IMG/VR virus record: IMGVR_UViG_3300043399_000272
Location: 1 to 64,000 of that record
Reading direction: 5' to 3' (one strand)
DNA length: 64,000 nucleotides
The notes under the pieces are model-generated. The model was not told where the DNA came from, searched no databases, and saw nothing but the letters and a program-made list of their open reading frames with translations. This document shows positions 13,994-24,649 of this stretch, piece after piece (position 1 is the first letter of the stretch; the number at the start of each line of letters is the position of its first letter). A program made the translations under genes and the position numbers.

Positions 13994-14013
13994 TAGATAT
14001 TTAACTGAATTAT

Positions 14014-14135: not shown

Positions 14136-14147
14136 TGGTCAAATGTG

Positions 14148-14224
14148 TGGTGCCCTCAGCGGGACTTGAACCCGCAGAATCCTGATTTTGAGTCAGGCAC
14201 GTATACCAATTCCATCACAAGGGC
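14148..14224 (-). tRNA. tRNA-Leu(CAA), short variable loop
   Basis: 77-nt cloverleaf. Confidence 0.85.
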
Positions 14225-14225
14225 G

Positions 14226-14399
14226 TTACTTACTCCTGCGATATTCGATCTTCATTTGTTCAGAAATGTTGAAAGAATTCAACAACCCTGCATCTTTGTC
14301 CGCTTTAATTTGCGGCCAAAATTGATTAGGGTCGTATTTCTCGCCAGAGACTGTTACGGTTTTGTATAGTTTGTCGTTGATGTAAATTTTGATTTCCAT
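14226..14399 (-). CDS. small hypothetical protein (MEIKIYINDK...)
   Basis: Read by hand; TAAATA 5 nt upstream. Confidence 0.6.
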   Translation of the reverse strand: MEIKIYINDKLYKTVTVSGEKYDPNQFWPQIKADKDAGLLNSFNISEQMKIEYRRSK

Positions 14400-14417
14400 A
14401 ACAGTATTTATGATATT

Positions 14418-14494
14418 TGGTGCCCCAGAGGAGACTCGAACTCCTAAAATTTGGCTTCTAAGACCAACACGTATACCAATTCCGTCACCGGGGC
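14418..14494 (-). tRNA. tRNA-Leu(TAG), short variable loop
   Basis: 77-nt cloverleaf. Confidence 0.85.
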
Positions 14495-14606
14495 AATTAA
14501 TTTTTAAAGAACAAAGTAAAGTATATCAAATAAAATTTACTTTGTCAAATGTTTTGGTTAACTGTTTCTCATCCTATACATTGTAAACAATGAGAAACAC
14601 TTTTAT

Positions 14607-14680
14607 TGGAGCGGGGTAAGAGAATCGAACTCTCCGCATCAGCTTGGAAGGCTGAGGTATTACCACTATACGAACCCCGC
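14607..14680 (-). tRNA. tRNA-Gly(TCC)
   Basis: Canonical cloverleaf. Confidence 0.95.
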
Positions 14681-14693
14681 GATAAATATATTT

Positions 14694-14858
14694 ATGTATA
14701 CATACGATGCTATTACAAAAACCGGGTTACATATTCATTTATCAATGAACGAGAACGCAGATTGTTACATCCTAGTATACGATTTGTATACCTATGATAT
14801 TGAAATGAAATTCTTTACAGACCAAGAGGCTGCTAAAAGATTTATCAATTCTCTATAA
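14694..14858 (+). CDS. small hypothetical protein (MYTYDAITK...)
   Basis: Read by hand; TAAATA upstream. Confidence 0.5.
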   Translation: MYTYDAITKTGLHIHLSMNENADCYILVYDLYTYDIEMKFFTDQEAAKRFINSL

Positions 14859-14860
14859 TA

Positions 14861-15286
14861 TTAATCATCTAATGGCACTTCTTGCCAGGAGCTATCTCCC
14901 ATCAATTTCACTGCCATAACAAACTTATTATGTTCACCTGGACCAGCACACCATCTTTGAGGATGAGTATGACATAACCAGTTTATATTCTTGTATGAAT
15001 CATTATAAACATAATAAGTGTGTCCATGTACTACTCTAAATCCATAAACGCATTTGTGCATTATGTCACTAACTGCCATGCGATTTACAAGTGATTCGGC
15101 TTGTCTTTTTAAGACTTCTACCTGCTCCATAATACGTTCATACTCTAGTTGAGCATGTAGCTTACCAGTATTAAGTATTATATCTTTTTCTTTTTCTACA
15201 TTGATAGGAGCAAAAGAAGGACTGCCTAATTCCATTGGATACGGCAAACTGTTTCTCTTGTCTCTGTCCTCTTTAGTTAAATCCAT
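14861..15286 (-). CDS. DUF2452-like protein
   Basis: SLPYPMELGSPSFAP...GHTYYVY...DSSW; start corrected to exclude the tRNA. Confidence 0.65.
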   Translation of the reverse strand: MDLTKEDRDKRNSLPYPMELGSPSFAPINVEKEKDIILNTGKLHAQLEYERIMEQVEVLKRQAESLVNRMAVSDIMHKCVYGFRVVHGHTYYVYNDSYKNINWLCHTHPQRWCAGPGEHNKFVMAVKLMGDSSWQEVPLDD

Positions 15287-15333
15287 AATAGTCAGAATTA
15301 TATATCGCTTGACGATGTTTGTCAAATATAAAT

Positions 15334-15433
15334 TGGTGCCCCTAGCAGGACTCGAACCTGCACACGCTGGCTTATCTGGCCAGTGCTTTGACGGAGTATA
15401 AGGCCGCTTCTTTACCAATTAAGCTATAGGGGC
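15334..15433 (-). tRNA. tRNA-like RNA with a TAT loop plus an extra GAT-loop arm
   Basis: Normal acceptor, D and T arms; loops CTTATAC and CAGATAA. Confidence 0.6.
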
Positions 15434-15445
15434 AATAAATACAAC

Positions 15446-15640
15446 ATGAACCGAACAGACGCTATTAAACTAGTAGAAGAATTGTTAGAGTTATATGCTA
15501 ACAAAAACTACGGTTCGGCTCAGATGGTAGCCATATATCAGCGAGGTTATCTCACAGGAGTACTGGCTGATCTAATCCGTTTAGATTTCTACGCAGAACA
15601 CAAAATCAGGCAGAAAATTGAGGAGCGTAGAAAAAAATAA
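15446..15640 (+). CDS. hypothetical protein
   Basis: TAAATA 4 nt upstream of the ATG. Confidence 0.65.
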   Translation: MNRTDAIKLVEELLELYANKNYGSAQMVAIYQRGYLTGVLADLIRLDFYAEHKIRQKIEERRKK

Positions 15641-15644
15641 TATT

Positions 15645-15718
15645 TGGCATCCCCCCAGGGATTCGAACCCCGACCAAGGGTTTTGGAGACCCGTATGCTG
15701 CCGTTACACTAGGGAGAT
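15645..15718 (-). tRNA. tRNA-Trp(CCA)
   Basis: Cloverleaf, G73. Confidence 0.9.
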
Positions 15719-15725
15719 ATCATCT

Positions 15726-15815
15726 TGGTGGAAGCGGTGAGATTCGAACTCACGGGACTCGTAAAAGACCGACGGTTTTCAAGACCGTTGCGTTAAACCA
15801 CTCTGCCACGCTTCC
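15726..15815 (-). tRNA. tRNA-Ser(TGA)
   Basis: Long V arm. Confidence 0.9.
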
Positions 15816-15816
15816 A

Positions 15817-15999
15817 TTAAGTTTTTTTATCAATACTATTACCTTTATCAGGAGTTCTCTCTACTACACCGTGTCGAGTGTACACCTCACATGTAATAAC
15901 TTTTTTACCTGTTACAGGATTTTGTATTGTCTTGTAAATTCTTGTTTGTATAGAATCTCTTACATAGTTTACAAGATGTTGAACACTGGTTACTATCAT
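15817..15999 (-). CDS. hypothetical protein
   Basis: TAAATA upstream. Confidence 0.55.
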   Translation of the reverse strand: MIVTSVQHLVNYVRDSIQTRIYKTIQNPVTGKKVITCEVYTRHGVVERTPDKGNSIDKKT

Positions 16000-16013
16000 A
16001 GATAATATTTATT

Positions 16014-16092
16014 TACCATATAGAAACACACTAGTACCCTACTGATTCCTGCTAGCGGTTTGTTTCAGACCGTAATGTGTTTTTATATGGTA
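16014..16092 (-). repeat. long-stem element L1 (18-bp inverted repeat)
   Basis: TACCATATAGAAACACAC...ATGTGTTTTTATATGGTA; overlaps the tRNA-Lys CCA. Confidence 0.7.
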
Positions 16093-16164
16093 GACGCTGT
16101 GGGATTCGAACCCACGACTCTCGGATTAAAAGTCCGATACTCTAGCCAACTGAGTTAAGCGTCC
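16088..16164 (-). tRNA. tRNA-Lys(TTT)
   Basis: Canonical cloverleaf. Confidence 0.95.
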
Positions 16165-16170
16165 ATGAAT

Positions 16171-16245
16171 TGGTCCCAGTGCTGAGATTCGAACTCAGTT
16201 CTCTCGGCTTAAGAGGCCGGACTTCACCGTCAAAGTTTCTCTGGG
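16171..16245 (-). tRNA. tRNA-Lys(CTT), atypical
   Basis: Cloverleaf with an atypical D region and an acceptor mismatch. Confidence 0.75.
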
Positions 16246-16272
16246 ATAGTACGTATTATAACTTGATTTTAC

Positions 16273-16346
16273 GTGCCATCCCTAGACCAATACATGAACG
16301 TCTAAGAATGACACTAACGTTTACCTCGTTTCATGTCAATCTCCTT
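16273..16346 (-). other. mini-ORF MKRGKR-UAG followed by a 15-bp hairpin
   Basis: AAGGAG SD, ATG at 16334, TAG at 16314-16316, stem 16300-16314 / 16273-16287. Confidence 0.55.
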
Positions 16347-16370
16347 AAAAAAATGTAAACTGAATTATTG

Positions 16371-16433
16371 TCAAAACTTTCGTAGGACAATGTACAACAT
16401 CACAAAAAGAACAATTATAACTATGATTGCCAT
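16371..16433 (-). CDS. 20-aa hydrophobic peptide (MAIIVIIVLFVMLYIVLRKF)
   Basis: AAGGAG SD; single TM-like segment. Confidence 0.5.
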   Translation of the reverse strand: MAIIVIIVLFVMLYIVLRKF

Positions 16434-16454
16434 ATCATTCTCCTTGTTAGTGTT

Positions 16455-16529
16455 TGGAGGTCAGGGTAGGAATTTAACCTACCTAATACGGGTTTGCAAT
16501 CCGTCGCATAAACGATCTGCCACCTGACC
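16455..16529 (-). tRNA. tRNA-Cys(GCA)
   Basis: Cloverleaf, U73, atypical T loop TTAAATT. Confidence 0.85.
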
Positions 16530-16538
16530 ATAAATTCT

Positions 16539-16632
16539 TGGCAGAGAGTGAGGGATTCGAACCCTCGGTGCTAGTTTTTGCTAGCACGCTTTCTTAGCAG
16601 GAAAGTGATTTAAGCCTCTCATCCAACTCTCT
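16539..16632 (-). tRNA. tRNA-Ser(GCT)
   Basis: Long V arm, G73. Confidence 0.9.
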
Positions 16633-16637
16633 ATAAA

Positions 16638-16811
16638 ACCATAAATTAGTGTACTTGGGTTGGCAGACTGTAAACAGACATTACCTTTCTATTATTGTAA
16701 TGTCATAGTGGTTGTACGTTTGCAACCATACAACCACCGGAGTCTGGCAGATATATTAATTGATTCAAAATATTACTATGTATATTAAAACCAAGTACAC
16801 TAACTTATGGT
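16638..16811 (-). repeat. long-stem element L2 (~21-bp inverted repeat)
   Basis: ACCATAAATTAGTGTACTTGG...CCAAGTACACTAACTTATGGT. Confidence 0.7.
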
Positions 16812-16884
16812 GCGCCCACTAGGACTTGAACCTAGGACCAATGGATTATGAGTCCACTGCTCTGACCAACTGAGCTATAGGCGC
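16808..16884 (-). tRNA. tRNA-Ile2/Met(CAT)
   Basis: Loop CTCATAA; C4 and C5 in the acceptor suggest Ile2. Confidence 0.85.
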
Positions 16885-16894
16885 ACTTGTTCAA

Positions 16895-17077
16895 ACCATA
16901 TTATAATACACTCCCAATGCATGTCAAGCACTGTAACTTTGTAGTATACCTTAAGCCAGAGTTTCGAACCTCTGAGATATAGCACTAGTCAAAAGCGACC
17001 TTTCGATCCTTTAAAAACTCTTGACTCCACGGGCAAGCTAGGTCCCCCGATATGACAAGAATGTACTATAATATGGT
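16895..17077 (-). repeat. long-stem element L3 (19-bp inverted repeat)
   Basis: ACCATATTATAATACACTC...GAATGTACTATAATATGGT. Confidence 0.7.
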
Positions 17078-17158
17078 GCGCCTAGCCGGAATCGAACCAG
17101 CACGACCGAAGTCGGGAGATTTTAAGTCTCCTGTGTCTACCTATTTCACCATAGGCGC
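17074..17158 (-). tRNA. tRNA-Leu(TAA)
   Basis: Long V arm. Confidence 0.9.
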
Positions 17159-17397
17159 AAAATTGTTAAACAAATTTTTAAAGAACAGACGATAGTATAT
17201 ATCATCTATTATTTGTTGTCAATGAATTTGTGAGCCTGACGCCTCCCTCATTCATCAGCATTTTACCCTTGATATTAAGCCGGCAGGGTTAGAGGTACGT
17301 AGTTCTAGTTGTTACTTGTTTGCTACTAGGATAATTAGTCCCAACTCACAAGGATTTCGAGGCCCTTGCTTTCCCAACATCTACACTCACAAAACTT

Positions 17398-17474
17398 TGG
17401 CGATGCGTACCGGGCTCGAACCGGTGACCACTTGCGTGACAGGCAAGTATTCTAACCAACTGAACTAACGCACC
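17398..17474 (-). tRNA. tRNA-Asp(GTC)
   Basis: Canonical, G73. Confidence 0.95.
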
Positions 17475-17580
17475 ATTATAAAAATCGAAACCAGTACACA
17501 TGGTAGCTAATTTGTGCTTGCACTGCACTCAAGGCAGTGAACAGTCGCCACTCTGTCTTTCCTCTGATTTCAAAAACTTT

Positions 17581-17859
17581 GAAGGATTACACGGCGTTAA
17601 ACTGTCAGCCTATGCTCGTTTAACTTCTGTCCTTCGGCAGCTTGACCGCTGACAATACTTTTTCTTACCCTACTGGACCGACTTACCTTTTGAGCATCGT
17701 TGCTTTCGCAAAGCCCCCGCGCTCCGGCAGGGGTCGGTTTCCGTCTACTCTAGTACTTGTTATTGTCTTAGTATTTGGACGCTCTCCTTTGCACCTGATC
17801 TGTGGGAGATTAAGCAACTGACTTATCCAATCAGTCTAATCAGTCGCTACGATTATTCT
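17581..17859 (-). ncRNA. putative ~280-nt structured RNA
   Basis: GC-richer intergenic stretch with several long-range complementarities and GNRA-like loops. Confidence 0.45.
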
Positions 17860-17946
17860 TGGTGGAGACGACTGGAGTCGAACCAGTAGTGCCTTTCGGG
17901 CGGCGGATTTACAGTCCACTGGGGTTACCAATTTTCCTACATCTCC
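17860..17946 (-). tRNA. tRNA-Tyr(GTA)
   Basis: Long V arm. Confidence 0.9.
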
Positions 17947-17952
17947 ATAATT

Positions 17953-18027
17953 TGGAAGCGCCACGGGGAGTCGAACCCCGCTTCTCAGGATGAAAACCTG
18001 ATGTCCTAACCGATAGACGATGGCGCC
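17953..18027 (-). tRNA. tRNA-Glu(TTC)
   Basis: Cloverleaf. Confidence 0.9.
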
Positions 18028-18047
18028 ATGAATTTGTTTTTATTATT

Positions 18048-18164
18048 AATCACTATATGAAAACACACTTGACAAAACGTGCCTCCCTATTTTGTCGATA
18101 GGTTCCAACGTGAGGATCAAGTACGGTTCGGCGTACCACGATAGTGTGTTTACATATAGTGATT
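18048..18164 (-). repeat. long-stem element L4 (22-bp inverted repeat)
   Basis: AATCACTATATGAAAACACACT...AGTGTGTTTACATATAGTGATT. Confidence 0.7.
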
Positions 18165-18309
18165 GCTTCACAGCAATTTATATGTTGGATAACTTTTTAA
18201 AGAACCTTAGTGATAAGCAAGATTGCTTTCTCACTGTCAATACAAGTATTGTAGCACCGACTTGATTATTTGTCAAATCTTTTTTGTGTAATACTTGTGT
18301 ATTAACATT

Positions 18310-18384
18310 TGGTCCGGCGTAGAGGAATCGAACCTCTATCTATGGCTTAGAAGGCCACTGTTCTATCCGTTGAACTAACGCCAG
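18310..18384 (-). tRNA. tRNA-Arg(TCT)
   Basis: Cloverleaf. Confidence 0.9.
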
Positions 18385-18451
18385 ATAATAGAGATATTAT
18401 ACTTCCTCAAAGAAAAAATGTCAAGTCTTTTTAAGAACTTGACATTTTGAT

Positions 18452-18528
18452 TGGCTCCCCGTCGTGGGCTCGAACCACGGACATTCTGATTAACAGTCAG
18501 ACGCATCTACCAACTGTGCTAACGGGGA
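18452..18528 (-). tRNA. tRNA-Asn(GTT)
   Basis: Cloverleaf, G73. Confidence 0.95.
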
Positions 18529-18535
18529 ATAAACT

Positions 18536-18611
18536 TGGTGCTGGATGTCGGGTTCGAACTGACGACCTTTCGCTTACAAGGCGAGTGCTCTACCAACTGA
18601 GCTAATCCAGC
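18536..18611 (-). tRNA. tRNA-Thr(TGT)
   Basis: Canonical cloverleaf. Confidence 0.95.
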
Positions 18612-18679
18612 TACTGAAATTATTTATATAGAGTGTATCACCGCGATAATTTTTTGTCAACTATCGCGGTGATATCGTC

Positions 18680-19240
18680 CTATGAAAGCAAGATTCTGCT
18701 ATGCTTAGGAACACCTGATAGCAGGTATTCCATTTGGTCAGCACGGATCGTGCGGTTTTGTAGAATCATGTTTTCATAGTGGTTAGGTTCATAAGGAACA
18801 TATAGCAATTCAAGGCCAGCTTCTTTTAGAGTCTTATGACCCTTCTTGCTGTTACATTCTTTACATGCAGTAACCACGTTCATCCAAGTGTTTTCGCCAC
18901 CACGTGCCCGAGGGATAATATGGTCACGACTTAGATTTGTATGGTTAACAAAGTGCCCGCCGCAATATGCACAAACATGTCGGTCACGACCGAACAATGT
19001 TCGGTTGCTTAATGCAACATGACTATGCTTATAAGGGTTGAATCCATGACCCTTGATAGCGATGATACTAGGTGTTTCTAGGTACGACATTGTGCCGTCG
19101 TTTTGAATACCTCCGCGGTACTGTGCGACAACATCACCCATACTCCATGCTACTGAGTTAGTAGCCCAGTATGAAATTGCGTCATCAGTGGAGATCCACT
19201 GCCGGGGAACTCCTGAAATGTCAAGTGCTAGAACAGCCAT
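18680..19240 (-). CDS. HNH endonuclease (McrA-like)
   Basis: RDRHVCAYCG...DHIIPRARGG...NVVTACKECNSKK; AGGAG SD. Confidence 0.9.
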   Translation of the reverse strand: MAVLALDISGVPRQWISTDDAISYWATNSVAWSMGDVVAQYRGGIQNDGTMSYLETPSIIAIKGHGFNPYKHSHVALSNRTLFGRDRHVCAYCGGHFVNHTNLSRDHIIPRARGGENTWMNVVTACKECNSKKGHKTLKEAGLELLYVPYEPNHYENMILQNRTIRADQMEYLLSGVPKHSRILLS

Positions 19241-19286
19241 GCTATACTCCTTCTCTGTTACTGTCTACATGTATTTAGATCCTGTT

Positions 19287-19363
19287 TGGAGGGACATGAG
19301 GGATTTGAACCCCCGACCTTTGGTTTCGAAGACCAAGACTCTTCCGAACTGAGTTAATGTCCC
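19287..19363 (-). tRNA. tRNA-Arg(TCG)
   Basis: Loop CTTCGAA. Confidence 0.9.
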
Positions 19364-19404
19364 ATATATTAATTATACAACAAATACCATTATTTGTCAA
19401 AAAC

Positions 19405-19487
19405 TGGTACCCCCTCTCGGGCTCGAACCGAGAAATTACACTCCTCTGTTTGAGAGAGGCGACTTTACCAAATTTGTCCAAGGGGGC
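19405..19487 (-). tRNA. tRNA-Leu(CAA), second copy
   Basis: Loop CTCAAAC, intermediate V arm. Confidence 0.8.
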
Positions 19488-19490
19488 ATT

Positions 19491-19566
19491 TGGTGCCAAA
19501 GACTGGGATCGAACCAGTGACACACGGATTTTCAATCCGCTGCTCTACCATCTGAGCTACATTGGC
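19491..19566 (-). tRNA. tRNA-Phe(GAA)
   Basis: Canonical cloverleaf. Confidence 0.95.
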
Positions 19567-19567
19567 G

Positions 19568-19741
19568 TTACTTGGGTTCAGGAATCTTCTTTAGTGATTC
19601 TTTTCTTACAAGACAATCACGTTGCGTTCCTAAACGAAAAACTCTCAAGTATTCGACACCATCGATCATCTGAATATCTTTGGTGTCTTTGCAATAAAAT
19701 TTCTCCCTATTACGGAGATTCTCAAAGTAAATAGTTTTCAT
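19568..19741 (-). CDS. small hypothetical protein (MKTIYFENLRN...)
   Basis: Read by hand; AAGGAG SD. Confidence 0.65.
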   Translation of the reverse strand: MKTIYFENLRNREKFYCKDTKDIQMIDGVEYLRVFRLGTQRDCLVRKESLKKIPEPK

Positions 19742-19755
19742 TTTAGTCTCCTTAT

Positions 19756-19830
19756 TGGTATCTCTGCCCAGAGTTGAACTGAGATTTATTCTTTAGGAGA
19801 GAATTGTTCTATCCATTGAACTACAGAGAT
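19756..19830 (-). tRNA. tRNA-Arg(CCT)
   Basis: Loop CTCCTAA. Confidence 0.85.
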
Positions 19831-19833
19831 ATG

Positions 19834-20208
19834 TTATCTTGTTACTTTTGCTCTGGCTGCTACCATGTCTTCAAACGAACCTTTTTCCATCACGTTCGTG
19901 TATGTGTCAGTCAGGCCACTAGCATGGTCTACTACTCTGTTATCACATTCATGGTACGTTCTGATTCTCTCAGTGCCTGCTTGGTATCTTTCAGTGTCCT
20001 CATGAAAATGAGCCTGAACTCTACTCAGACAAGTAATGTATGCTTGACGTTTGTTATCTTCACGACTACGACTATTCGTGCCGTTCGCAGTTATTCCAGT
20101 TGGCTCATGTATACAGCGGCAACAGTTTTGATGTTTGTTGCGATGCTGGCCACCTTTGCCAGTTCCAGAAAACCATTCATATCTAAATTGATCCTCAGTG
20201 ACTTTCAT
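19834..20208 (-). CDS. stand-alone GGQ peptidyl-tRNA hydrolase (RF-1 domain; ArfB/PrfH-like)
   Basis: SGTGKGGQHRNK, HEPTGI, SRSREDNK, ERIRTY...RVVDH. Confidence 0.85.
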   Translation of the reverse strand: MKVTEDQFRYEWFSGTGKGGQHRNKHQNCCRCIHEPTGITANGTNSRSREDNKRQAYITCLSRVQAHFHEDTERYQAGTERIRTYHECDNRVVDHASGLTDTYTNVMEKGSFEDMVAARAKVTR

Positions 20209-20233
20209 ATTGTTCTCCACTGATATTTATAAT

Positions 20234-20324
20234 TGGCAGTGAGTGAGAGATTCGAACTCTCGTGCCGTGTAATACGACCATCATCTTTCCAGGATGCGCC
20301 CTTAAGCCTCTCAGGCAACTCACT
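20234..20324 (-). tRNA. tRNA-Ser(GGA)
   Basis: Long V arm, G73. Confidence 0.9.
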
Positions 20325-20329
20325 ATGTT

Positions 20330-20405
20330 TGGTGTCCAGTACTGGGATCGAACCAGTGACCTCTACCGTGTCAAGGTAGCGTTCATACCGCTGAACTAAC
20401 CGGAC
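20330..20405 (-). tRNA. tRNA-Val(GAC)
   Basis: Canonical cloverleaf. Confidence 0.95.
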
Positions 20406-20470
20406 ATATAAACTACTAAAGTACATGATTCTACTACTTTGAAAGTACTAAGTACTTCAAAGGAAATATC

Positions 20471-20740
20471 ATGAACGATCAACATCTATTACGCACATAC
20501 CTTAACATCATCAATGAGGCAGTTGGTGCCATCAACGAGAAGTGGGGCAAGTCTACTGTAGTTAGCCCAGAAGAAAAAGGCAAATATGCTGGCAAATCTA
20601 AAGCTGAATTACTTAAACAATATAATGCTCTTAAAGCAAGCGGCCCTCATAAGAAAGGTTCTCCCGAGTACGGAAGAATGCGTGAATTAGCATTTGCTAT
20701 TCGTGCAAAAAGTAATTGGGGTAAAGTTAAAGATGAATAA
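20471..20740 (+). CDS. hypothetical protein
   Basis: AAGGA SD; N-terminal LRTYLNIINE motif. Confidence 0.75.
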   Translation: MNDQHLLRTYLNIINEAVGAINEKWGKSTVVSPEEKGKYAGKSKAELLKQYNALKASGPHKKGSPEYGRMRELAFAIRAKSNWGKVKDE

Positions 20741-20948
20741 TGTCATGCGTAACTTTATCAACATACTTAATGAGACACATATATCATATGGTCACAAAAT
20801 AGATAAATCTTCTGCTAACTACACTGACCACGGGGTCGGCGGCGAAGTATGTCACAATTGTAGACATTTCCGTGCACCACATAGATGTGAAATAGTTGAC
20901 GGATACATCGAACCTGGTGGTTGGTGTAGATACTTTGAAGAAGAATAA
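20733..20948 (+). CDS. HiPIP-like iron-sulfur protein
   Basis: Y...CHNCRHF...C...V.G.I...GWC..F pattern; overlapping start. Confidence 0.65.
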   Translation: MNNVMRNFINILNETHISYGHKIDKSSANYTDHGVGGEVCHNCRHFRAPHRCEIVDGYIEPGGWCRYFEEE

Positions 20949-21066
20949 AACGGGATACTTTTCTTGACGAATGCTCTACCTAATGAGCTAATCTGGCATG
21001 AAGCCAAATGTTGGAATCGAACCAACTACCTATCGTTTGATAGAATTTTGCTGTATGTATCCCTAA
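20949..21066 (-). ncRNA. CAGCA-handle RNA 5: circularly permuted tRNA, YrlA-like
   Basis: GGGAUAC-AUACAGCAA, T arm, acceptor closed by a UUCAU loop, D arm, GUAUCCC. Confidence 0.8.
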
Positions 21067-21068
21067 AC

Positions 21069-21146
21069 TGGTCTGGGTAGCAGGATTTGAACCTGCAGCC
21101 TCGAAGTTCCAAGCCTCGCCGTCTACCAAGTTGACAATATACCCAG
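21069..21146 (-). tRNA. tRNA-Pro(TGG), second copy, atypical
   Basis: Loop CTTGGAA (A37). Confidence 0.8.
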
Positions 21147-21153
21147 ATATTTT

Positions 21154-21519
21154 TTACAAACTAGAAATTGTTTTTCTTTTATATTTTCTAGCGTATTCTA
21201 TGCTACCCTTCATTGCGGCAGCACAACAAAATTTGTGATCTTTCCTAAAGATCCATTCATTCAACTTGAATGATTTCAATACTCTATCACCATTCCACCA
21301 TCCACGTTGAGTTTCAATGTAACCTTCTTGTTCAAGTTGGTCTCTCAATTTAGTGAATTCGTCATGGTCTTTATTACTGACACTAACTGCCTTGTCATAA
21401 CCCTTAAGAATTTTGATAAGGTCTTCATGTGTAGGATTGGTGCGGTCTTTAATAAAATCATGTTCAATCCTCACAGACACATCGGTAATGTATTGCTCGT
21501 CAATGACAAATTGTTTCAT
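21154..21519 (-). CDS. hypothetical protein
   Basis: AAGGA SD. Confidence 0.7.
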   Translation of the reverse strand: MKQFVIDEQYITDVSVRIEHDFIKDRTNPTHEDLIKILKGYDKAVSVSNKDHDEFTKLRDQLEQEGYIETQRGWWNGDRVLKSFKLNEWIFRKDHKFCCAAAMKGSIEYARKYKRKTISSL

Positions 21520-21685
21520 AACATTTCCTTATAGATTGGGAGCCTAGCTATCTGTCGTTACACAGCCTCACTAGATTGTCTCGTATACAAGAGTTTATAC
21601 TACCTTACTAATCTACTGATGTGTCACATACCAGCACAGTATGCTAGATTAGAAGGGACTCAATCGTACCGTCTATCCCATAAAT

Positions 21686-21760
21686 TGGTGCTCCTTGAAG
21701 GAATCGAACCTCCACCCCTGGATTACAAAACCAGTCCACTACCATTATGATTAAAAGAGC
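21686..21760 (-). tRNA. tRNA-Thr(TGT), second copy, atypical
   Basis: Loop TTTGTAA. Confidence 0.8.
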
Positions 21761-21765
21761 AATAT

Positions 21766-21888
21766 TGGTGCCGCCGCTAGGATTCGAACCTAGATAACCC
21801 CCTCGACATGGTTAAAGAAAATATGCTGAACGTACTCTAAAACAGAGTCACCCTTTTATAAGGCGTCCTACCGTTAGACGACAGCGGC
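21766..21888 (-). ncRNA. CAGCA-handle RNA 6: tRNA body with the handle in place of the anticodon loop
   Basis: GCCGCUG/CGGCGGC-ACCA, D and T arms; insert ACUCUG-UUU-UAGAGU-ACGUUCAGCAU. Confidence 0.75.
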
Positions 21889-21896
21889 ATTAAATT

Positions 21897-21972
21897 TGGT
21901 GCAGCCAGTGGACTCGAACCACTGCGGGAATCTAGAATGCGGGGGACATGCCCCCTACCCCTCCATTACTGC
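21897..21972 (-). ncRNA. tRNA-like RNA with acceptor and T arm only
   Basis: UUCGAGU T loop and ACCA end; no D arm; GGGGG-CAUGU-CCCCC hairpin. Confidence 0.55.
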
Positions 21973-21977
21973 AAAAC

Positions 21978-22052
21978 TGGCGCCGTAGAAGGGAATCGAA
22001 CCCTCATAGGACGGATAGACAATCCGTTGCATTACCAGTCTACCACTACGGC
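21978..22052 (-). tRNA. tRNA-Asp(GTC), second copy, atypical
   Basis: Loop TTGTCTA (U37), G73. Confidence 0.8.
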
Positions 22053-22062
22053 ATTAATTGAA

Positions 22063-22128
22063 TTTAGGGTGACAGTGCGTTAGTGGCCGATACTGTCATT
22101 CACCACTCGCTTCTACGCATACCCTAAA
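22063..22128 (-). ncRNA. putative compact pseudoknot RNA
   Basis: Four complementary segment pairs in 66 nt. Confidence 0.45.
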
Positions 22129-22132
22129 ATAT

Positions 22133-22207
22133 TGGCTCCGGTGGCTGGGATCGAACCAACGACCAATTGATTAACAGTCAACTGCACTACCGCTGTGCTA
22201 CACCGGA
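22133..22207 (-). tRNA. tRNA-Asn(GTT), second copy
   Basis: Cloverleaf. Confidence 0.9.
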
Positions 22208-22208
22208 A

Positions 22209-22595
22209 TTAAATTTTACAGAAAATACCTTTGAGAATTTTACTTGCCGGTTCAAAGTGTTCTTCCATGATATGATTTGCCATACCATATGCTGTTGTTC
22301 CCATGTCTATGTAATATCTAGGACTGGGCCAACGATTTTGTTTGAACGGATAACTATGAATAAGCAAGCATTCATCACCGACTTTTAACAAGTCTTTCTG
22401 TTTACCAGTACTTATTGCAGTAAGCATTTCAATTGCAACTGCATTGTTACCGATATCAGTTCTTTGAAAGTTATTTGCCATCAAGTGAACCACATAGGCT
22501 TCTACCTCGTGTTCTAGTATGATGCCATTAACACCTTCACTCTCTACTACTAGGTCGTAGCATGATTTAACATAATCAAACCAGTGCTTGCTCAT
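22209..22595 (-). CDS. hypothetical protein
   Basis: VGDECL motif; TAAATA upstream. Confidence 0.75.
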   Translation of the reverse strand: MSKHWFDYVKSCYDLVVESEGVNGIILEHEVEAYVVHLMANNFQRTDIGNNAVAIEMLTAISTGKQKDLLKVGDECLLIHSYPFKQNRWPSPRYYIDMGTTAYGMANHIMEEHFEPASKILKGIFCKI

Positions 22596-22609
22596 AGTAG
22601 TATTTATTC

Positions 22610-22686
22610 TGGTGCCGCCACATGGATTTGAACCATGGACCCCCGCCTTATCAAGACGGTGCTCTAACCAACTGAGCTATGGAGGC
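22610..22686 (-). tRNA. tRNA-Ile(GAT)
   Basis: Cloverleaf. Confidence 0.9.
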
Positions 22687-22691
22687 ATTAC

Positions 22692-22765
22692 TGGTTCCTC
22701 CACCAGGTTACGATCCTGGGTCTCACGATTATCAGTCGTGGGCTCTTCCATTGAGCTATAGAGGA
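22692..22765 (-). tRNA. tRNA-Ile(GAT), second copy, atypical T loop
   Basis: T loop ATCGTAA. Confidence 0.8.
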
Positions 22766-22766
22766 A

Positions 22767-23111
22767 TTAACTTACATAACCCCAGCGATTATTCTTCTGG
22801 GATTTAATTCTTGTTTCATCAAATTCAATTAAGCGAGTTAAGTTAACTGTGCCTGCATGAATCTTTCTATGACAATGCGAACACAACATTACACACTTCT
22901 TAGCCTCTGCCATAAGATTCTCCCATGACATAATTTTGCTAGACAGTGAGAATTCCTTGTGTTCACTGTTCAAATGATGAAAGTCGTAAACGATTGGATC
23001 ATCCTGTAAATCACAGACCGAACATCTATTATCAAACCCTTCTACAAGTTTAACCTTAGTGTTCTTTCTCCACTCTTTTACTTTTTCGTATCTTCTTTCT
23101 TTCGGTGTCAT
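22767..23111 (-). CDS. HNH endonuclease
   Basis: CSVC...DFHH...KCVMLCSHCHRKIH. Confidence 0.85.
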   Translation of the reverse strand: MTPKERRYEKVKEWRKNTKVKLVEGFDNRCSVCDLQDDPIVYDFHHLNSEHKEFSLSSKIMSWENLMAEAKKCVMLCSHCHRKIHAGTVNLTRLIEFDETRIKSQKNNRWGYVS

Positions 23112-23178
23112 AATATTTCCTCAGTTATCTTGTATTTATAACTGATTCACAAAAAATGACACCGGGTATAAACTTCTT

Positions 23179-23256
23179 TGGGGTGGATAGTCGGGATCGA
23201 ACCGACGCAATACCGGAATCACAACCCGGGGCCTTAACCACTTGGCTATACCCACC
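23179..23256 (-). tRNA. tRNA-His(GTG)
   Basis: C73 and encoded G-1. Confidence 0.9.
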
Positions 23257-23267
23257 ACAAAGAAGTC

Positions 23268-23342
23268 TGGTGGAAGTAGTAAGATTCGAACTTACGATAG
23301 GCACCGTATGAAGATGCTGCATTACCACTTTGCTATACTTCC
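23268..23342 (-). tRNA. tRNA-Met(CAT)
   Basis: Loop TTCATAC. Confidence 0.85.
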
Positions 23343-23351
23343 ATTATGAAT

Positions 23352-23423
23352 CAATTTGAAATACACTATTTTTCACCCCATCAGTAGAGTGACCCATCAG
23401 TAGGCGTAGTGTATTTCAAATTG
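23352..23423 (-). repeat. long-stem element L5 (17-bp perfect inverted repeat, internal 12-nt direct repeat)
   Basis: CAATTTGAAATACACTA...TAGTGTATTTCAAATTG; ACCCATCAGTAG x2 inside. Confidence 0.7.
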
Positions 23424-23495
23424 GTGCGGGGTAAGGGAGTCGAACCCTTGACTAAACGTTGGCAACGTTTGATTTTACCGTTAAACTAACCACGC
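23422..23495 (-). tRNA. tRNA-Gly(GCC), second copy, A73
   Basis: Cloverleaf with an atypical discriminator. Confidence 0.8.
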
Positions 23496-23587
23496 ATTAA
23501 ACTGGGCCCTTGAGGTCACCGTCGAAAGTGACATTACCAACTATTAACGGGTTGCGCGCCAGCCGCGTCAAACTCAAGGATAAAACT

Positions 23588-23663
23588 TGGTACCTGAGAC
23601 TGGACTCGAACCAGTATCGCTCACTGTGTAAAAGTGACGTATGACCTCTCTACGCACTCAGGT
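23588..23663 (-). tRNA. tRNA-Val(TAC), second copy
   Basis: Loop TTTACAC. Confidence 0.8.
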
Positions 23664-23670
23664 ATAATCT

Positions 23671-23748
23671 TGGAACACCGGGTCAGATTCGAACTGACGG
23701 TTTTGCGGATTTGCAATCCACTGCATTGGGCCTCTCTGCCACCGGTGC
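23671..23748 (-). tRNA. tRNA-Cys(GCA), second copy
   Basis: U73. Confidence 0.85.
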
Positions 23749-23755
23749 ATAAATT

Positions 23756-23831
23756 TGGTGCTGATACCGAGAGTCGAACTCGGGACCTCATCATTACCAA
23801 TGATGTATTCTACCAACTGAACTATATCAGC
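23756..23831 (-). tRNA. tRNA-Thr(GGT)
   Basis: Canonical cloverleaf. Confidence 0.95.
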
Positions 23832-23833
23832 AT

Positions 23834-23899
23834 AACAGGATCGTTTTTTACGGTTTAGATTAGAAGTCTAATGTATTTTGATTGCTGAACCGATCCTAA
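23834..23899 (-). ncRNA. CAGCA-handle RNA 7 (Arg UCU-type anticodon hairpin)
   Basis: UAGGAUCG-GUUCAGCAA...UUAGA-CUUCUAA-UCUAA...CGAUCCUG. Confidence 0.75.
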
Positions 23900-23903
23900 A
23901 ACT

Positions 23904-23980
23904 TGGCGCGTCTGGCAGGATTCGAACCCACGACCCCTTGGTTCGTAGCCAAGTACTCTATCCAACTGAGCTACAGACGC
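23904..23980 (-). tRNA. tRNA-Arg(ACG)
   Basis: Canonical cloverleaf. Confidence 0.95.
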
Positions 23981-24075
23981 ATAAATTCGTGCCGCTTCTT
24001 GGGACTTGTACCCCAGTTACTCCATTCCCTTGTCGCGGCTCCGAGGGCGAGTCTGTTTTCTTCTAGCTAGAATTC

Positions 24076-24151
24076 TGGCACCCCCTGATGGACTCGAACC
24101 ACCGAATGTCGGAATCAAAATCCGATGCCTTACCAACTTGGCGAAGGAGGT
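24076..24151 (-). tRNA. tRNA-Gln(TTG)
   Basis: Loop TTTTGAT, G73. Confidence 0.9.
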
Positions 24152-24158
24152 ATAATAT

Positions 24159-24221
24159 AACAGGATGCTGGTTTGCTTTTTTCCAAATAAAAAGTTTTTT
24201 AATTTGCTGGAAGCATCCTAA
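24159..24221 (-). ncRNA. CAGCA-handle RNA 8
   Basis: UAGGAUGC-UUCCAGCAA...CUUUUU-AUUUGGA-AAAAAG...GCAUCCUG. Confidence 0.7.
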
Positions 24222-24225
24222 AACT

Positions 24226-24300
24226 TGGTGGAAGCCGAGGGAGTTGAACCCTTCTAGACAGCGATCTTGCAAGGATCACCCGTAGCCCGCTACTGCCCCC
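24226..24300 (-). tRNA. tRNA-Ala(TGC), second copy, atypical D arm
   Basis: G3:U70, A73, loop CTTGCAA. Confidence 0.75.
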
Positions 24301-24308
24301 AAATTGTA

Positions 24309-24386
24309 TGGTGTGTCCTGCAAGAATCGAACTTGCTTCTACGATTTTTCAGACCGTCGCTGAATGACCACACTAGCTCAAGACAC
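24309..24386 (-). tRNA. tRNA-Phe(GAA), second copy, atypical
   Basis: Loop CTGAAAA. Confidence 0.8.
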
Positions 24387-24390
24387 ATAT

Positions 24391-24477
24391 TGGTGGAGCC
24401 CTAAGGAATCGAACCTCTTGCCACCACCCACCTTATTATGGCTACGATTTTACAGACCGCAAGCGGGAAAGGGCTCC
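24391..24477 (-). tRNA. D-armless tRNA-Tyr(GTA)-like RNA
   Basis: Perfect acceptor stem, loop CTGTAAA, no D hairpin. Confidence 0.65.
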
Positions 24478-24487
24478 ATTAAATTGT

Positions 24488-24562
24488 TGGTATCCTGTAT
24501 GGGTTTTGATCCCATCTCACTAGTTTGAAGGACTAGCGGCCACACCAGCTGCCTCACAGGAT
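24488..24562 (-). tRNA. tRNA-Glu(TTC), second copy, atypical
   Basis: Loop CCTTCAA (C33), T loop ATCAAAA. Confidence 0.7.
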
Positions 24563-24571
24563 ATATATTGT

Positions 24572-24649
24572 TGGCAAGGGTGACTGGATTCGAACCAGTG
24601 ATGACGATTTCAAAGACCGTTGCCTTAGGCCAGACTAGGCGACACCCCA
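24572..24649 (-). tRNA. tRNA-Gln(TTG), second copy
   Basis: Loop CTTTGAA, G73. Confidence 0.85.

What the first reader, a model, noticed from the sequence alone, without database searches (positions are those of the whole stretch)
23834..24221. Minimal handle RNAs display anticodon stem-loop mimics
Seen: each of the three ~60-nt handle RNAs carries one 5-6-bp hairpin with a 7-nt loop. These are CU-UCU-AA (23834 copy, the same loop as tRNA-Arg at 18310), CU-GUA-AA (10653 copy, the same as tRNA-Tyr) and a weaker AU-UUG-GA (24159 copy). Inference: protein-protected anticodon decoys, or sensors whose cleavage reports anticodon-nuclease activity.
Basis: partly seen in the sequence, partly recalled or inferred. 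Interest (0 to 1): 0.68.

Follow-up and report, generated by a model that had tools for sequence, protein, structure and literature searches.

The report
Phage Ro-partner RNAs displaying tRNA pieces
The three ~60-base elements are real small RNAs of a large family that sits beside a Ro60-like phage protein; a conserved "handle" carries a swappable insert, which in about a third of family members, but clearly in only one of the three copies here, copies a tRNA anticodon arm.

Summary
The three elements exist on the minus strand, the strand of the 46 tRNA genes. Each has a terminal 7-bp stem and one inner hairpin with a 7-nt loop: CUGUAAA, CUUCUAA and AUUUGGA. The first two loops equal the phage's own tRNA-Tyr and tRNA-Arg(UCU) loops.

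They belong to a widespread family, and the window holds seven members, not three. All share A(A/G)G, a covarying stem, a single-stranded CAGCAA, a cargo, the return stem, and C(U/C)UGU. The family is tightly linked to a DUF2828/DUF7788 protein (9189-10625) whose model folds like Ro60. I read them as Y-RNA-like partners of that protein.

Cargo varies. It can be one hairpin, a tRNA body, a YrlA-like T-arm/D-arm module, or long unknown inserts.

The anticodon-mimic idea is partly supported.
- **23836 copy:** its class keeps a 5-bp stem and CU-NNN-AA loop over many covarying stems, mostly Lys-UUU, Thr-UGU and Arg-UCU.
- **10655 (5'UTR) copy:** orthologues have loops of 6-9 nt.
- **24161 copy:** relatives have loops of 4-7 nt.

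A decoy or sensor function is untested.

The handle closely resembles Dictyostelium Class I RNAs, an unexpected lead.

The parts
23836..23897 (-). Handle RNA a2, 62 nt, between tRNA-Arg(ACG) and tRNA-Thr(GGU). Layout: AGGAUCG-GUU-CAGCAA ... UAC-A-[UUAGA CUUCUAA UCUAA]-ACC-GUA ... CGAUCCU-G. The anticodon-arm-like hairpin is at 23855-23871 and its loop at 23860-23866.
24161..24219 (-). Handle RNA a3, 59 nt, between tRNA-Ala and tRNA-Gln. Hairpin CUUUUU / AUUUGGA / AAAAAG at 24176-24194. The loop is not conserved in relatives.
   Evidence: best Rfam hit RF01414 at 32.5 bits
10655..10711 (-). Handle RNA a1, 57 nt. It is the 5' leader of the Ro60-like gene and ends 29 nt before the ATG. Hairpin UUUCA / CUGUAAA / UGAAA at 10671-10687.
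10766..10930 (-). Handle RNA d, 165 nt. Same handle (AGGAUCG-GUA-CAGCAA ... CGAUCCUG) with a long cargo that is conserved in relatives and of unknown structure.
10943..11167 (-). Handle RNA e, about 225 nt. Variant handle GGGAUGA-UUA-CAGCAU ... CAUCCCG, with a compensating A-U to G-C change in the first pair. It has its own promoter.
14016..14133 (-). Handle RNA Y1, 118 nt. Handle AGGUUCU/AGAACCU enclosing a T-arm-like hairpin, a further hairpin and a D-arm-like hairpin, the layout of YrlA.
20951..21063 (-). Handle RNA Y2, 113 nt. Handle GGGAUAC/GUAUCCC enclosing a T arm (UUGG UUCGAUU CCAA), a hairpin and a D arm (UAGCUCAUUAGGUAGAGCA).
9189..10625 (-). Ro60-like protein gene, 478 aa. Pfam DUF2828 + DUF7788; PHROG 850 'RNA-binding protein'. 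A helical ring plus a vWA domain with invariant MIDAS residues D276, S278 and S280.
10720..10748 (-). 12/12 sigma-70-type promoter (TTGACA-17-TATAAT) placing the transcript start a few bases before handle RNA a1.
11189..11216 (-). 12/12 sigma-70-type promoter upstream of handle RNA e.
6115..8696 (-). Possible RNA end-healing genes downstream of the Ro60-like gene: a DSP/PTP-type phosphatase (8130-8696), an AAA_33 P-loop kinase of PNK type (7453-7917) and a calcineurin-like phosphoesterase (6115-6738).
8642..24649 (-). Array of 46 tRNA genes in which four of the handle RNAs are embedded.

Best explanation
The three elements are small non-coding RNAs of a modular family that I call handle RNAs. 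I read them as the Y-RNA-like partners of the phage's Ro60-like protein (DUF2828/DUF7788, 9189-10625).

Shown:
- Each RNA has a handle: A(A/G)G, a terminal stem of about 7 bp, 2-4 nt, an invariant single-stranded CAGCAA, then at the 3' end the return strand and C(U/C)UGU.
- The stem sequence covaries between lineages while CAGCAA and the end letters stay fixed.
- The RNAs lie on the gene's strand, as its 5' leader, just upstream or downstream of it, or in the neighbouring tRNA array at a fixed spacing.
- The protein model folds like Ro60.

Inferred:
- The RNAs are released from the gene's own promoters and from polycistronic tRNA precursors by the tRNA-processing enzymes.
- The Ro60-like ring binds the handle and so stabilises the RNA and presents its cargo.
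- The cargo is interchangeable and is often a piece of a tRNA. It can be an anticodon arm alone (a2 and 48 of 164 minimal members), a tRNA body, or a YrlA-like T-arm/D-arm module (Y1, Y2).

Most likely function, inferred only: the complex offers tRNA look-alikes to proteins that act on tRNAs during infection. For the anticodon-arm class, these would be host anticodon-loop nucleases or other anticodon-loop binders, so the RNA would act as bait or competitor. This would be part of the counter-defence role already indicated for phage tRNA arrays and for a Ro60-like protein of an E. coli phage.
For: **Family and link to the gene**
- 73 of 77 protein-fetched IMG/VR loci (74-98% identity) carry the exact pattern 25-34 nt before the ATG, and 3 of the 4 misses carry variant handles (CAGCAU or GGGAU..AUCCC), so 76 of 77 have the RNA.
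- In 80 loci from GTDB genomes (31-64% identity), a strict definition finds 62 handle RNAs within 700 nt of the gene on its strand and 0 on the other strand. Only 9 occur in the remaining 469 kb.
- An IMG/VR pattern scan that did not require the next two stem pairs found them complementary in 120 of 152 matches, against about 6% by chance.
- Compensatory A-U to G-C changes occur in the first pair.
- Cultured E. coli phage JH2 has four handle RNAs in the tRNA array next to the gene.

**Protein**
- AlphaFold model: pLDDT 81.5, pTM 0.79. The 13 best PDB matches are all Ro60, over the whole length (E 2e-9 to 3e-5, TMq 0.35-0.61).
- 702 cultured phage records carry it. Some are annotated 'Ro-like RNA binding protein'.

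**Processing context**
- The gap to the upstream tRNA is mostly 6-7 nt and to the downstream tRNA mostly 9-10 nt.

**tRNA-like cargo**
-. 35 of the 48 anticodon-arm-like loops are CUU-N-UAA: Lys-UUU 17, Arg-UCU 9, Thr-UGU 9.
- Long members score on Rfam YrlA (48.9 bits, below threshold).

**Precedents**
- Y RNAs with tRNA-like domains lie next to Ro60 genes in bacteria and phages (PMC4201824).
- Thermus phage Ro60 binds two RNAs encoded upstream of its gene (PMC12135203).
- Bas63 gp130, Ro60-like and next to tRNA genes, counters the Ppl defence system. Its authors guessed that some 'tRNAs' there are Y RNAs (PMC11482910).
- Phage tRNAs evade tRNA-cutting defences (PMC10264068, PMC11555353).
Against: - There is no direct evidence that the RNAs are made or where they end. 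Only metatranscriptome contigs of relatives were available, and these may contain DNA.
- No binding test was possible.
- The hairpins are thermodynamically weak and the whole-element folds are not better than shuffles.
- Two of the three copies in the finding belong to classes whose loop length and position 33 vary.
- Most cargos in distant relatives are not anticodon-like: 16 of 69 match a loose definition.
- No RtcB, Rnl1-type or Rnl2-type RNA ligase was found in the 260-kb record, which is 74% complete, so a self-contained repair cycle is not supported.
- The one defence system experimentally linked to a Ro60-like phage protein (Ppl) is not known to cut tRNA (PMC11482910).
Confidence: 0.6

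Rival explanations
1. The anticodon-like hairpins are relics. Cargo is picked up from neighbouring tRNA genes by recombination inside tRNA arrays. Only the handle, and perhaps any small hairpin, matters. The loop is not read as an anticodon loop by anything.
For: - Cargo is very diverse and includes whole tRNA bodies and permuted tRNA parts.
- Loop length drifts between 4 and 9 nt in the 5'UTR class and in the a3 class.
- Units are gained and lost: one metatranscriptome contig joins 24156 to 24225, so it lacks a3 exactly.
Against: - CU-NNN-AA with exactly 5 bp is kept while all five stem pairs change on both sides.
- CUUUUAA occurs on 7 different stems.
- The same architecture recurs under unrelated handles in distant lineages.
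- 35 of 48 loops are CUU-N-UAA, far from the spread of anticodons in the arrays.
Confidence: 0.25
2. The RNAs work as in the known Ro60/Y RNA/PNPase machine. The handle binds the Ro60-like ring, and the cargo tethers a host exoribonuclease or another effector, redirecting RNA decay during infection. The resemblance to anticodon arms is incidental to effector binding.
For: - Deinococcus and Salmonella Y RNAs tether Ro60 to PNPase (PMC4201824).
- Thermus phage Ro60 with its RNAs forms complexes with host PNPase (PMC12135203).
- Y1 and Y2 have the YrlA layout.
Against: Nothing here bears on PNPase. The minimal RNAs lack the large internal loop of classical Y RNAs. The model does not explain selection for particular anticodon-loop sequences.
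Confidence: 0.3
3. The elements are cis-acting signals rather than free RNAs. Candidates are an autoregulatory operator in the leader of the Ro60-like gene, and processing or spacer hairpins in the tRNA precursor.
For: - a1 lies 25-34 nt upstream of the start codon in 76 of 77 loci.
- The spacing to flanking tRNAs is fixed.
Against: - Copies lie kilobases from the gene.
- Cargo ranges from 20 to 220 nt.
- Some copies have their own promoters.
- Giant-virus loci hold tandem arrays.
- A leader copy can be both operator and released RNA, as for Y RNAs co-transcribed with rsr.
Confidence: 0.15
4. The elements are DNA-level repeats: ends of a small mobile element, or sites for the HNH homing endonucleases encoded in the array.
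For: - The terminal inverted repeats, and the presence/absence difference between relatives.
- HNH genes lie in the array.
Against: - The strand-specific CAGCAA is always co-oriented with the tRNAs and with the gene (62 against 0).
- Stem sequences covary freely between lineages while pairing is kept.
- G-U pairs occur on the RNA strand.
- No target-site duplication was seen.
Confidence: 0.04

Closest known systems
Bacterial and phage Y RNAs of the YrlA type with Ro60/Rsr (Rfam RF02553; PMC4201824; Thermus phage phiLo Yrl1/Yrl2, PMC12135203)
   Same: - Encoded beside a Ro60-fold protein gene, often several per locus and upstream of the gene.
- The 5' and 3' ends pair into the presumed protein-binding stem.
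- The rest is an effector module that mimics tRNA parts.
- Found in phages with many tRNAs.
- Y1, Y2 and many relatives have the same T-arm / hairpin / D-arm order.
   Different: - The protein belongs to Pfam DUF2828/DUF7788 and is not detected as TROVE by sequence. It matches Ro60 only by fold.
- The handle has its own signature (CAGCAA, AG...CUGU), which is absent from the YrlA consensus.
- The minimal members are 48-66 nt, against 80-130 nt.
- An anticodon arm as the only cargo is not described for Y RNAs. In YrlA the Ro-binding stem stands in place of the anticodon stem.
Class I RNAs of dictyostelid social amoebae (Rfam RF01414; PMC7919456)
   Same: - About 60 nt, with a start AAG or AG.
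- A 6-7-bp terminal stem whose sequence varies while pairing is kept.
- A single-stranded motif directly after the 5' strand. Its near-invariant positions C6, C9, A10 and A11 are the phage CAGCAA. The Rfam consensus is CCUUACAGCAA.
- An end CUGU whose C pairs with the 5' G, an A-rich 3' segment and a variable AU-rich interior.
- The Rfam model aligns end to end with all three copies and with copies in other loci.
   Different: - Scores are 17-33 bits, below the gathering score of 41.5. GC-richer relatives do not score at all.
- Class I RNAs are eukaryotic, use the DUSE promoter and were reported as unique to Dictyostelia.
- Their known direct binder is the RRM protein Rnp1A/CIBP.
- No link to a DUF2828 protein is on record. 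One pulled-down protein, DDB_G0281243, is uncharacterised and I could not inspect it.
Phage-encoded tRNAs as counter-defence against tRNA-cutting systems (PMC10264068, PMC11555353), and T4 Pnk/Rnl1 repair of PrrC-cut tRNA-Lys (established knowledge)
   Same: - The same genomic setting, a large phage tRNA array.
- The commonest mimicked loop is that of tRNA-Lys(UUU), the classical anticodon-nuclease target.
- Kinase and phosphatase genes lie next to the Ro60-like gene.
   Different: - Handle RNAs are not tRNAs. They have no acceptor end, and neither ARAGORN nor the Rfam tRNA model detects the three copies. They cannot be charged.
- No RNA ligase was found in this phage record.
Bas63 gp130, a Ro60-like counter of the Ppl defence system in an E. 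coli Felixounavirus (PMC11482910)
   Same: - A Ro60-fold protein gene directly beside the tRNA array.
- Felixounaviruses carry the DUF2828 homologue (about 40% identity) and, in phage JH2, four handle RNAs.
   Different: I did not check that gp130 itself is the DUF2828 homologue. The paper did not identify the RNAs. Ppl is not known to act on tRNA.

Membership tests
Y RNA / YrlA (partner RNA of a Ro60 protein) | Encoded next to a Ro60 orthologue | tested here: met
   The gene at 9189-10625 has a Ro60 fold. The RNA is its leader in 76 of 77 loci, and distant loci give 62 same-strand against 0 opposite-strand copies.
Y RNA / YrlA (partner RNA of a Ro60 protein) | 5' and 3' ends form a conserved stem supported by covariation | tested here: met
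Y RNA / YrlA (partner RNA of a Ro60 protein) | Match to the Rfam models (Y_RNA, YrlA) at gathering score | tested here: not met
   The three copies have no hit. Long relatives reach 28-49 bits on YrlA against a gathering score of 69.
Y RNA / YrlA (partner RNA of a Ro60 protein) | Physical binding to the Ro60 protein | not testable with these tools
   Needs a pull-down or a gel-shift assay.
Dictyostelium Class I RNA (RF01414) | Covariance-model score at or above the gathering score of 41.5 bits | tested here: not met
   32.5, 25.0 and 17.0 bits, all full-length alignments of model positions 1-56.
Dictyostelium Class I RNA (RF01414) | About 60 nt, AAG/AG start, 6-bp terminal stem, adjacent conserved single-stranded motif, CUGU end | tested here: met
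   compared with the description in PMC7919456.
Dictyostelium Class I RNA (RF01414) | DUSE promoter about 60 nt upstream; dictyostelid genome | tested here: not met
   Bacterial-type promoters or tRNA co-transcription, in a phage genome.
tRNA | Cloverleaf with acceptor end, recognised by ARAGORN or Rfam RF00005 | tested here: not met
   None of the three copies is called.
Anticodon stem-loop mimic | 5-bp stem, 7-nt loop, pyrimidine-32, U33, purine-37 in the copy itself | tested here: met
   All three copies have a 7-nt loop with U33 and purine-37. a1 and a2 have 5-bp stems and C32. a3 has a 6-bp stem and A32.
Anticodon stem-loop mimic | The same features kept in homologues while the stem covaries | tested here: inconclusive
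   Met for the a2 class. Not met for the a1 orthologues (loops 4-9 nt, position 33 variable) or for the a3 class.
Anticodon stem-loop mimic | Recognition by an anticodon-loop-directed enzyme | not testable with these tools
   Needs cleavage or binding assays.

The most novel reading that the evidence does not exclude
Handle RNAs and the Class I RNAs of Dictyostelium are one RNA family, spread over phages, giant viruses, contigs binned with bacterial and archaeal genomes, and social amoebae. Their common partner is a DUF2828 Ro60-like protein. In phage tRNA arrays the family has been adapted to display bare anticodon arms, chiefly Lys-UUU, Thr-UGU and Arg-UCU, as protein-held baits against anticodon-loop nucleases. 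If so, this would give a 20-year-old orphan class of abundant amoebal RNAs a protein partner and a testable origin. It would also add an RNA-decoy layer to phage counter-defence.
Probability: 0.25. Interest if true: 0.9.

Novelty: new variant of a known kind. Interest (0 to 1): 0.72.

Why it matters
Ro60-like genes beside phage tRNA arrays are already annotated, and one has been shown to counter a defence system, but their RNA partners were only guessed at.

This analysis gives a simple, searchable signature for those RNAs. It shows that the signature holds from 98% down to about 30% protein identity. It also shows that the RNAs are modular carriers of tRNA pieces.

Three open questions become directly testable in E. 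coli phages of the Felixounavirus group:
- what phage Ro60-like proteins bind;
- why tRNA arrays contain unannotated spacers;
- whether bare anticodon arms serve as baits for tRNA-cutting defence nucleases.

The resemblance to Dictyostelium Class I RNAs, if it reflects common descent, would link an orphan eukaryotic RNA class to the Ro60/Y RNA world.

Tried and rejected
- **Known phage by DNA:** a megablast of 22000-26000 found only short tRNA matches.
- **Rfam:** at gathering scores it finds only tRNAs in the window.
- **Ro60 by sequence:** phmmer found nothing. The profile gave only E 0.84 to a TROVE protein in the MIDAS region. The fold search was needed.
- **Expression:** all RNA runs are Logan contigs with at most 12% of the sampled words. 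They show relatives' tRNA arrays in freshwater and wastewater metatranscriptomes but no ends or strand.
- **Dictyostelium protein link:**
  - The word search with the phage protein and with a giant-virus homologue returned only viral and metagenomic relatives. The only source names were 'DUF2828 family protein', 'TROVE domain-containing protein' and JGI's 'Domain of unknown function (DUF2828)'.
  - The ESM Atlas search gave only viral clusters.
  - Avesson 2011 and Aspegren 2004 are not held.
  - DDB_G0281243 appears in one preprint without domain information.
- **GC-richer handle RNAs** from Firmicutes-type loci do not score on RF01414.
- **YrlA-type RNA upstream of the gene in the window (10700-11200):** Rfam gave no match. 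That stretch instead holds handle RNAs d and e, found with the handle signature.
- **RNA ligases:** RtcB and the Rnl2 type were not found in the record. The Rnl1 search is uninformative because its control found nothing anywhere.
- **Not done:** I built no covariance model of the family. The big representative protein search and the complex prediction were not used, because neither would have changed the conclusions.
Full report
**Setting**

The window is the first 64 kb of a 260-kb IMG/VR virus record, estimated 74% complete. It carries 46 tRNA genes, all on the minus strand, between 8642 and 24649. No close relative exists among deposited phage genomes at the DNA level.

**Observation**

- The strict pattern occurs three times in the window, against 0.04 expected, and nowhere else in the record.
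- The RNA strand is minus. Copies a2 (23836-23897) and a3 (24161-24219) fill tRNA-tRNA spacers. Copy a1 (10655-10711) starts a few bases after a perfect TTGACA-17-TATAAT promoter and ends 29 nt before the ATG of ORF 9189-10625.
- The three copies share UUUU-AGGAU-NN-NNN-CAGCAA ... NN-AUCCU-GUU, with a GC-to-CG exchange in the stem.
- Each has one inner hairpin with a 7-nt loop: CUGUAAA, CUUCUAA and AUUUGGA.
- The first two loops are identical to the loops of the phage's tRNA-Tyr and tRNA-Arg(UCU). The third equals neither tRNA-Gln loop.
- The hairpins are weak, and whole-element folds are not significantly better than shuffles.

**What the elements belong to**

The ORF downstream of a1 carries Pfam DUF2828 and DUF7788 and matches PHROG 850 'RNA-binding protein'. 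Sequence searches against solved structures find nothing convincing. An AlphaFold model built on 27 homologues (pLDDT 81.5, pTM 0.79) matches Ro60 over its whole length. The 13 best PDB hits are Ro60 of Thermus phage phiLo, Xenopus, Deinococcus and human, ahead of isolated vWA domains.

The link between the RNA and this gene holds at every distance tested.
- **Close relatives.** Eighty IMG/VR loci were fetched by the protein alone (74-98% identity). Of the 77 with enough upstream sequence, 73 show the exact element pattern 25-34 nt before the start codon. Three of the four exceptions carry variant handles (CAGCAU, or GGGAU...AUCCC with a compensating first pair), so 76 of 77 have the RNA.
- **Distant relatives.** Eighty loci were fetched from GTDB species genomes with a protein profile (31-64% identity; many are probably phage contigs in bins). 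A strict definition was used: seven Watson-Crick pairs, 2-4 nt, CAGCAA, and a G after the return strand. It finds 62 RNAs within 700 nt of the gene on its strand and none on the opposite strand. Only nine occur in the other 469 kb.
- **Stem variation.** The stem sequence differs by lineage (AAGACAC, AGGUUAC, AGAGUUG, GAGAUGC, AGACCNN and others). CAGCAA and the ends A(A/G)G ... C(U/C)UGU persist.
- **Unbiased stem test.** In an IMG/VR pattern scan that did not demand them, the next two stem pairs were complementary in 120 of 152 matches.
- **Cultured phages.** The protein is present in 702 cultured phage records, including Felixounavirus, mycobacteriophages (annotated 'Ro-like RNA binding protein'), Listeria, Staphylococcus, Vibrio and jumbo phages. 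In E. coli phage JH2 four handle RNAs lie in the tRNA array just downstream of the gene.

**More copies in the window**

Using the general signature on the whole record, all perfect hits fall in the window on the minus strand. Besides a1-a3 there are four more.
- d (10766-10930, 165 nt).
- e (10943-11167), a variant handle with its own 12/12 promoter.
- Y1 (14016-14133) and Y2 (20951-21063). Their cargo is a T-arm-like hairpin, a second hairpin and a D-arm-like hairpin, the order found in YrlA.

The gene is therefore preceded by three handle RNAs, and four more lie in the tRNA array.

**Cargo**

Across loci the cargo falls into several types.
- One small hairpin (48-66 nt RNAs).
- A D arm plus anticodon arm plus T arm, with the handle in place of the acceptor stem.
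- An anticodon arm plus a T arm.
- The YrlA-like permuted module (about 112-120 nt). One example scores 48.9 bits on Rfam YrlA, against a gathering score of 69.
- Conserved long inserts of 150-245 nt of unknown structure.

In tRNA arrays the RNAs sit mostly 6-7 nt after the preceding tRNA and mostly 9-10 nt before the next. This fits release by the tRNA-processing enzymes, which is inferred.

**Test of the anticodon-mimic idea**

I took the best hairpin of each of 164 distinct minimal RNAs.
- **tRNA-adjacent copies (82 with a hairpin call).** 43 have 7-nt loops. Of these, 31 are identical to an anticodon loop among the 1569 tRNAs of the same loci, against a chance rate of 1.9%. 29 are CU-NNN-AA, and 28 of those have exactly 5 bp.
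- **Whole set.** 48 RNAs have the perfect architecture. The loops are CUUUUAA 17, CUUCUAA 9, CUUGUAA 9, CUGUAAA 4, CUUGAAA 3, CUGCAAA 2 and four singletons. So 35 of 48 are CUU-N-UAA.
- **Covariation.** On an alignment of these 48, all five hairpin pairs change on both sides, and the pair next to the loop is A-U in 45. The covariation score is 0.454 against 0.103 in shuffles and at most 0.071 in slid controls. The set was chosen for pairing, so only the diversity of pair types counts as evidence, not the percentage paired.
- **Independent recurrence.** The same architecture recurs under unrelated handles in distant loci.

So a2 belongs to a class in which an anticodon-arm shape is under selection.

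The other two copies do not.
- The 49 distinct leaders orthologous to a1 have loops of 4 to 9 nt (1, 5, 14, 9 and 20 cases for 4, 6, 7, 8 and 9 nt). Position 33 varies, and only a 3' AUAA/UAAA is kept.
- The relatives of a3 keep the CUUUU/AAAAG-type stem with loops of 4-7 nt of varied sequence.

**Mechanism**

Shown:
- a modular RNA with a covarying terminal stem and an invariant single-stranded hexamer;
- obligate neighbourhood with a Ro60-fold protein gene;
- co-orientation with tRNAs.

Inferred:
- the protein binds the handle, as Ro60 binds the terminal stem of Y RNAs, and holds out the cargo;
- cargo made of tRNA pieces addresses proteins that act on tRNA.

For the anticodon-arm class, the simplest reading is bait or competitor for anticodon-loop nucleases. 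The commonest loop is that of tRNA-Lys(UUU), the classical PrrC target (established knowledge). Phage tRNA arrays are already implicated in evading tRNA-cutting defences (PMC10264068, PMC11555353). A Ro60-like protein next to the tRNA array of E. coli phage Bas63 counters the Ppl defence system, and its authors speculated that some neighbouring 'tRNAs' are Y RNAs (PMC11482910).

Downstream of the gene lie a DSP/PTP-type phosphatase, a PNK-type P-loop kinase and a metallophosphoesterase. No RtcB or Rnl2-type RNA ligase was found in the record (the Rnl1 search is uninformative because its control found nothing anywhere), so a closed repair cycle is not supported.

The rivals remain open. They are tRNA relics without loop function, a PNPase-tethering machine as in Deinococcus and Thermus phage phiLo, and cis-acting leader or processing signals. 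A DNA-level repeat is unlikely.

**Comparison with known families**

The system works like Ro60 with YrlA-type Y RNAs (PMC4201824, PMC12135203). However, neither the protein (by sequence) nor the three RNAs (by Rfam) meet those families' formal thresholds, and the handle signature is different.

Unexpectedly, the only Rfam family besides tRNA that aligns with the copies is Dictyostelium Class I RNA.
- The alignments are end to end, at 32.5, 25 and 17 bits for the three copies and 28-33 bits for copies in other loci. All are below the gathering score of 41.5.
- The published description of Class I RNAs fits the handle RNAs point by point. It lists about 60 nt, a start AAG, a 6-bp terminal stem that covaries, and an adjacent 11-nt motif. 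The motif's near-invariant C6, C9, A10 and A11 coincide with CAGCAA in the Rfam consensus CCUUACAGCAA. The description also lists an end CUGU whose C pairs with the 5' G, and a variable interior.
- Giant-virus bins carry tandem handle RNAs beside a DUF2828 homologue.
- Class I RNAs were reported as unique to Dictyostelia, and their known binder is an RRM protein.
- One further pulled-down protein, DDB_G0281243, is uncharacterised, and I could not examine it.

I treat the link as a strong lead, not as a demonstrated homology.

**Expression**

Only assembled contigs of metatranscriptomes were available. They show related tRNA arrays in freshwater and wastewater samples. One contig joins 24156 to 24225, so a relative lacks a3 precisely. 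They give no ends or strand and may contain DNA.

**Verdict**

- The elements are best described as Y-RNA-like partners of a DUF2828 Ro60-like protein that carry tRNA pieces. a2 is a genuine anticodon-arm look-alike.
- This is a new variant of a known kind of system, with a testable and potentially far-reaching link to Dictyostelium Class I RNAs.

Noticed in passing
window 10766-10930, 10943-11167, 14016-14133, 20951-21063 (all minus strand): Four further handle RNAs that the finding did not list. Two have long cargos and lie upstream of the Ro60-like gene. Two are YrlA-like (T arm, hairpin, D arm) and lie inside the tRNA array.
   Followed up: yes
window 15334-15433 (-): ARAGORN calls a 100-nt 'tRNA-???' with a four-base anticodon CUCC. 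Rfam scores it as tRNA at 57.6 bits. It may be an intron-containing or frameshift-suppressor-like tRNA.
   Followed up: no
window 18680-19240 (-) and 22767-23111 (-): HNH endonuclease ORFs are interspersed in the tRNA array. They are probably homing endonucleases.
   Followed up: no
window 19834-20220 (-): An ORF with an RF-1 domain (ArfB / peptidyl-tRNA-hydrolase-like) lies inside the tRNA array.
   Followed up: no
window 6115-8696 (-): A DSP/PTP-type phosphatase, an AAA_33 PNK-type kinase and a calcineurin-like phosphoesterase lie directly downstream of the Ro60-like gene. No RtcB or Rnl2-type RNA ligase was found anywhere in the 260-kb record (the Rnl1 search was uninformative).
   Followed up: partly
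window 23981-24075: A 95-nt GC-rich spacer between tRNA-Arg(ACG) and tRNA-Gln, inside the finding's coordinates, has no tRNA or handle signature. It may be another small RNA.
   Followed up: no
window 24157-24224: One metatranscriptome contig (run X6, record 28) joins 24156 directly to 24225. A related phage therefore lacks handle RNA a3 exactly, so the units are gained or lost as cassettes.
   Followed up: partly
window 23860-23866 and 24182-24188: In a2 and a3 the hairpin loop occupies nucleotides 32-38 counted from the first base of the handle, the standard numbering of a tRNA anticodon loop. In a1 it is 30-36. This may be coincidence.
   Followed up: no
L136:13802-13950, L192:64-252, L195:19-167, L111:46-107: Giant-virus metagenome bins carry tandem arrays of handle RNAs (AGGAUACAUCCAGCAA ... 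GUAUCCUG). In L136 they lie beside a DUF2828 homologue with 27% identity to the phage protein.
   Followed up: partly
L284:6725-7584 (Escherichia phage JH2, NC_029023): Four unannotated handle RNAs (AGACCNN...NNGGUCUG) lie in the tRNA array just downstream of the annotated 'RNA-binding protein'. This makes the system testable in E. coli.
   Followed up: partly
window 11142-11846 (+): A DnaJ-domain ORF on the plus strand overlaps, at its annotated start, the promoter and 5' end of handle RNA e on the minus strand. Its true start may lie further downstream.
   Followed up: no
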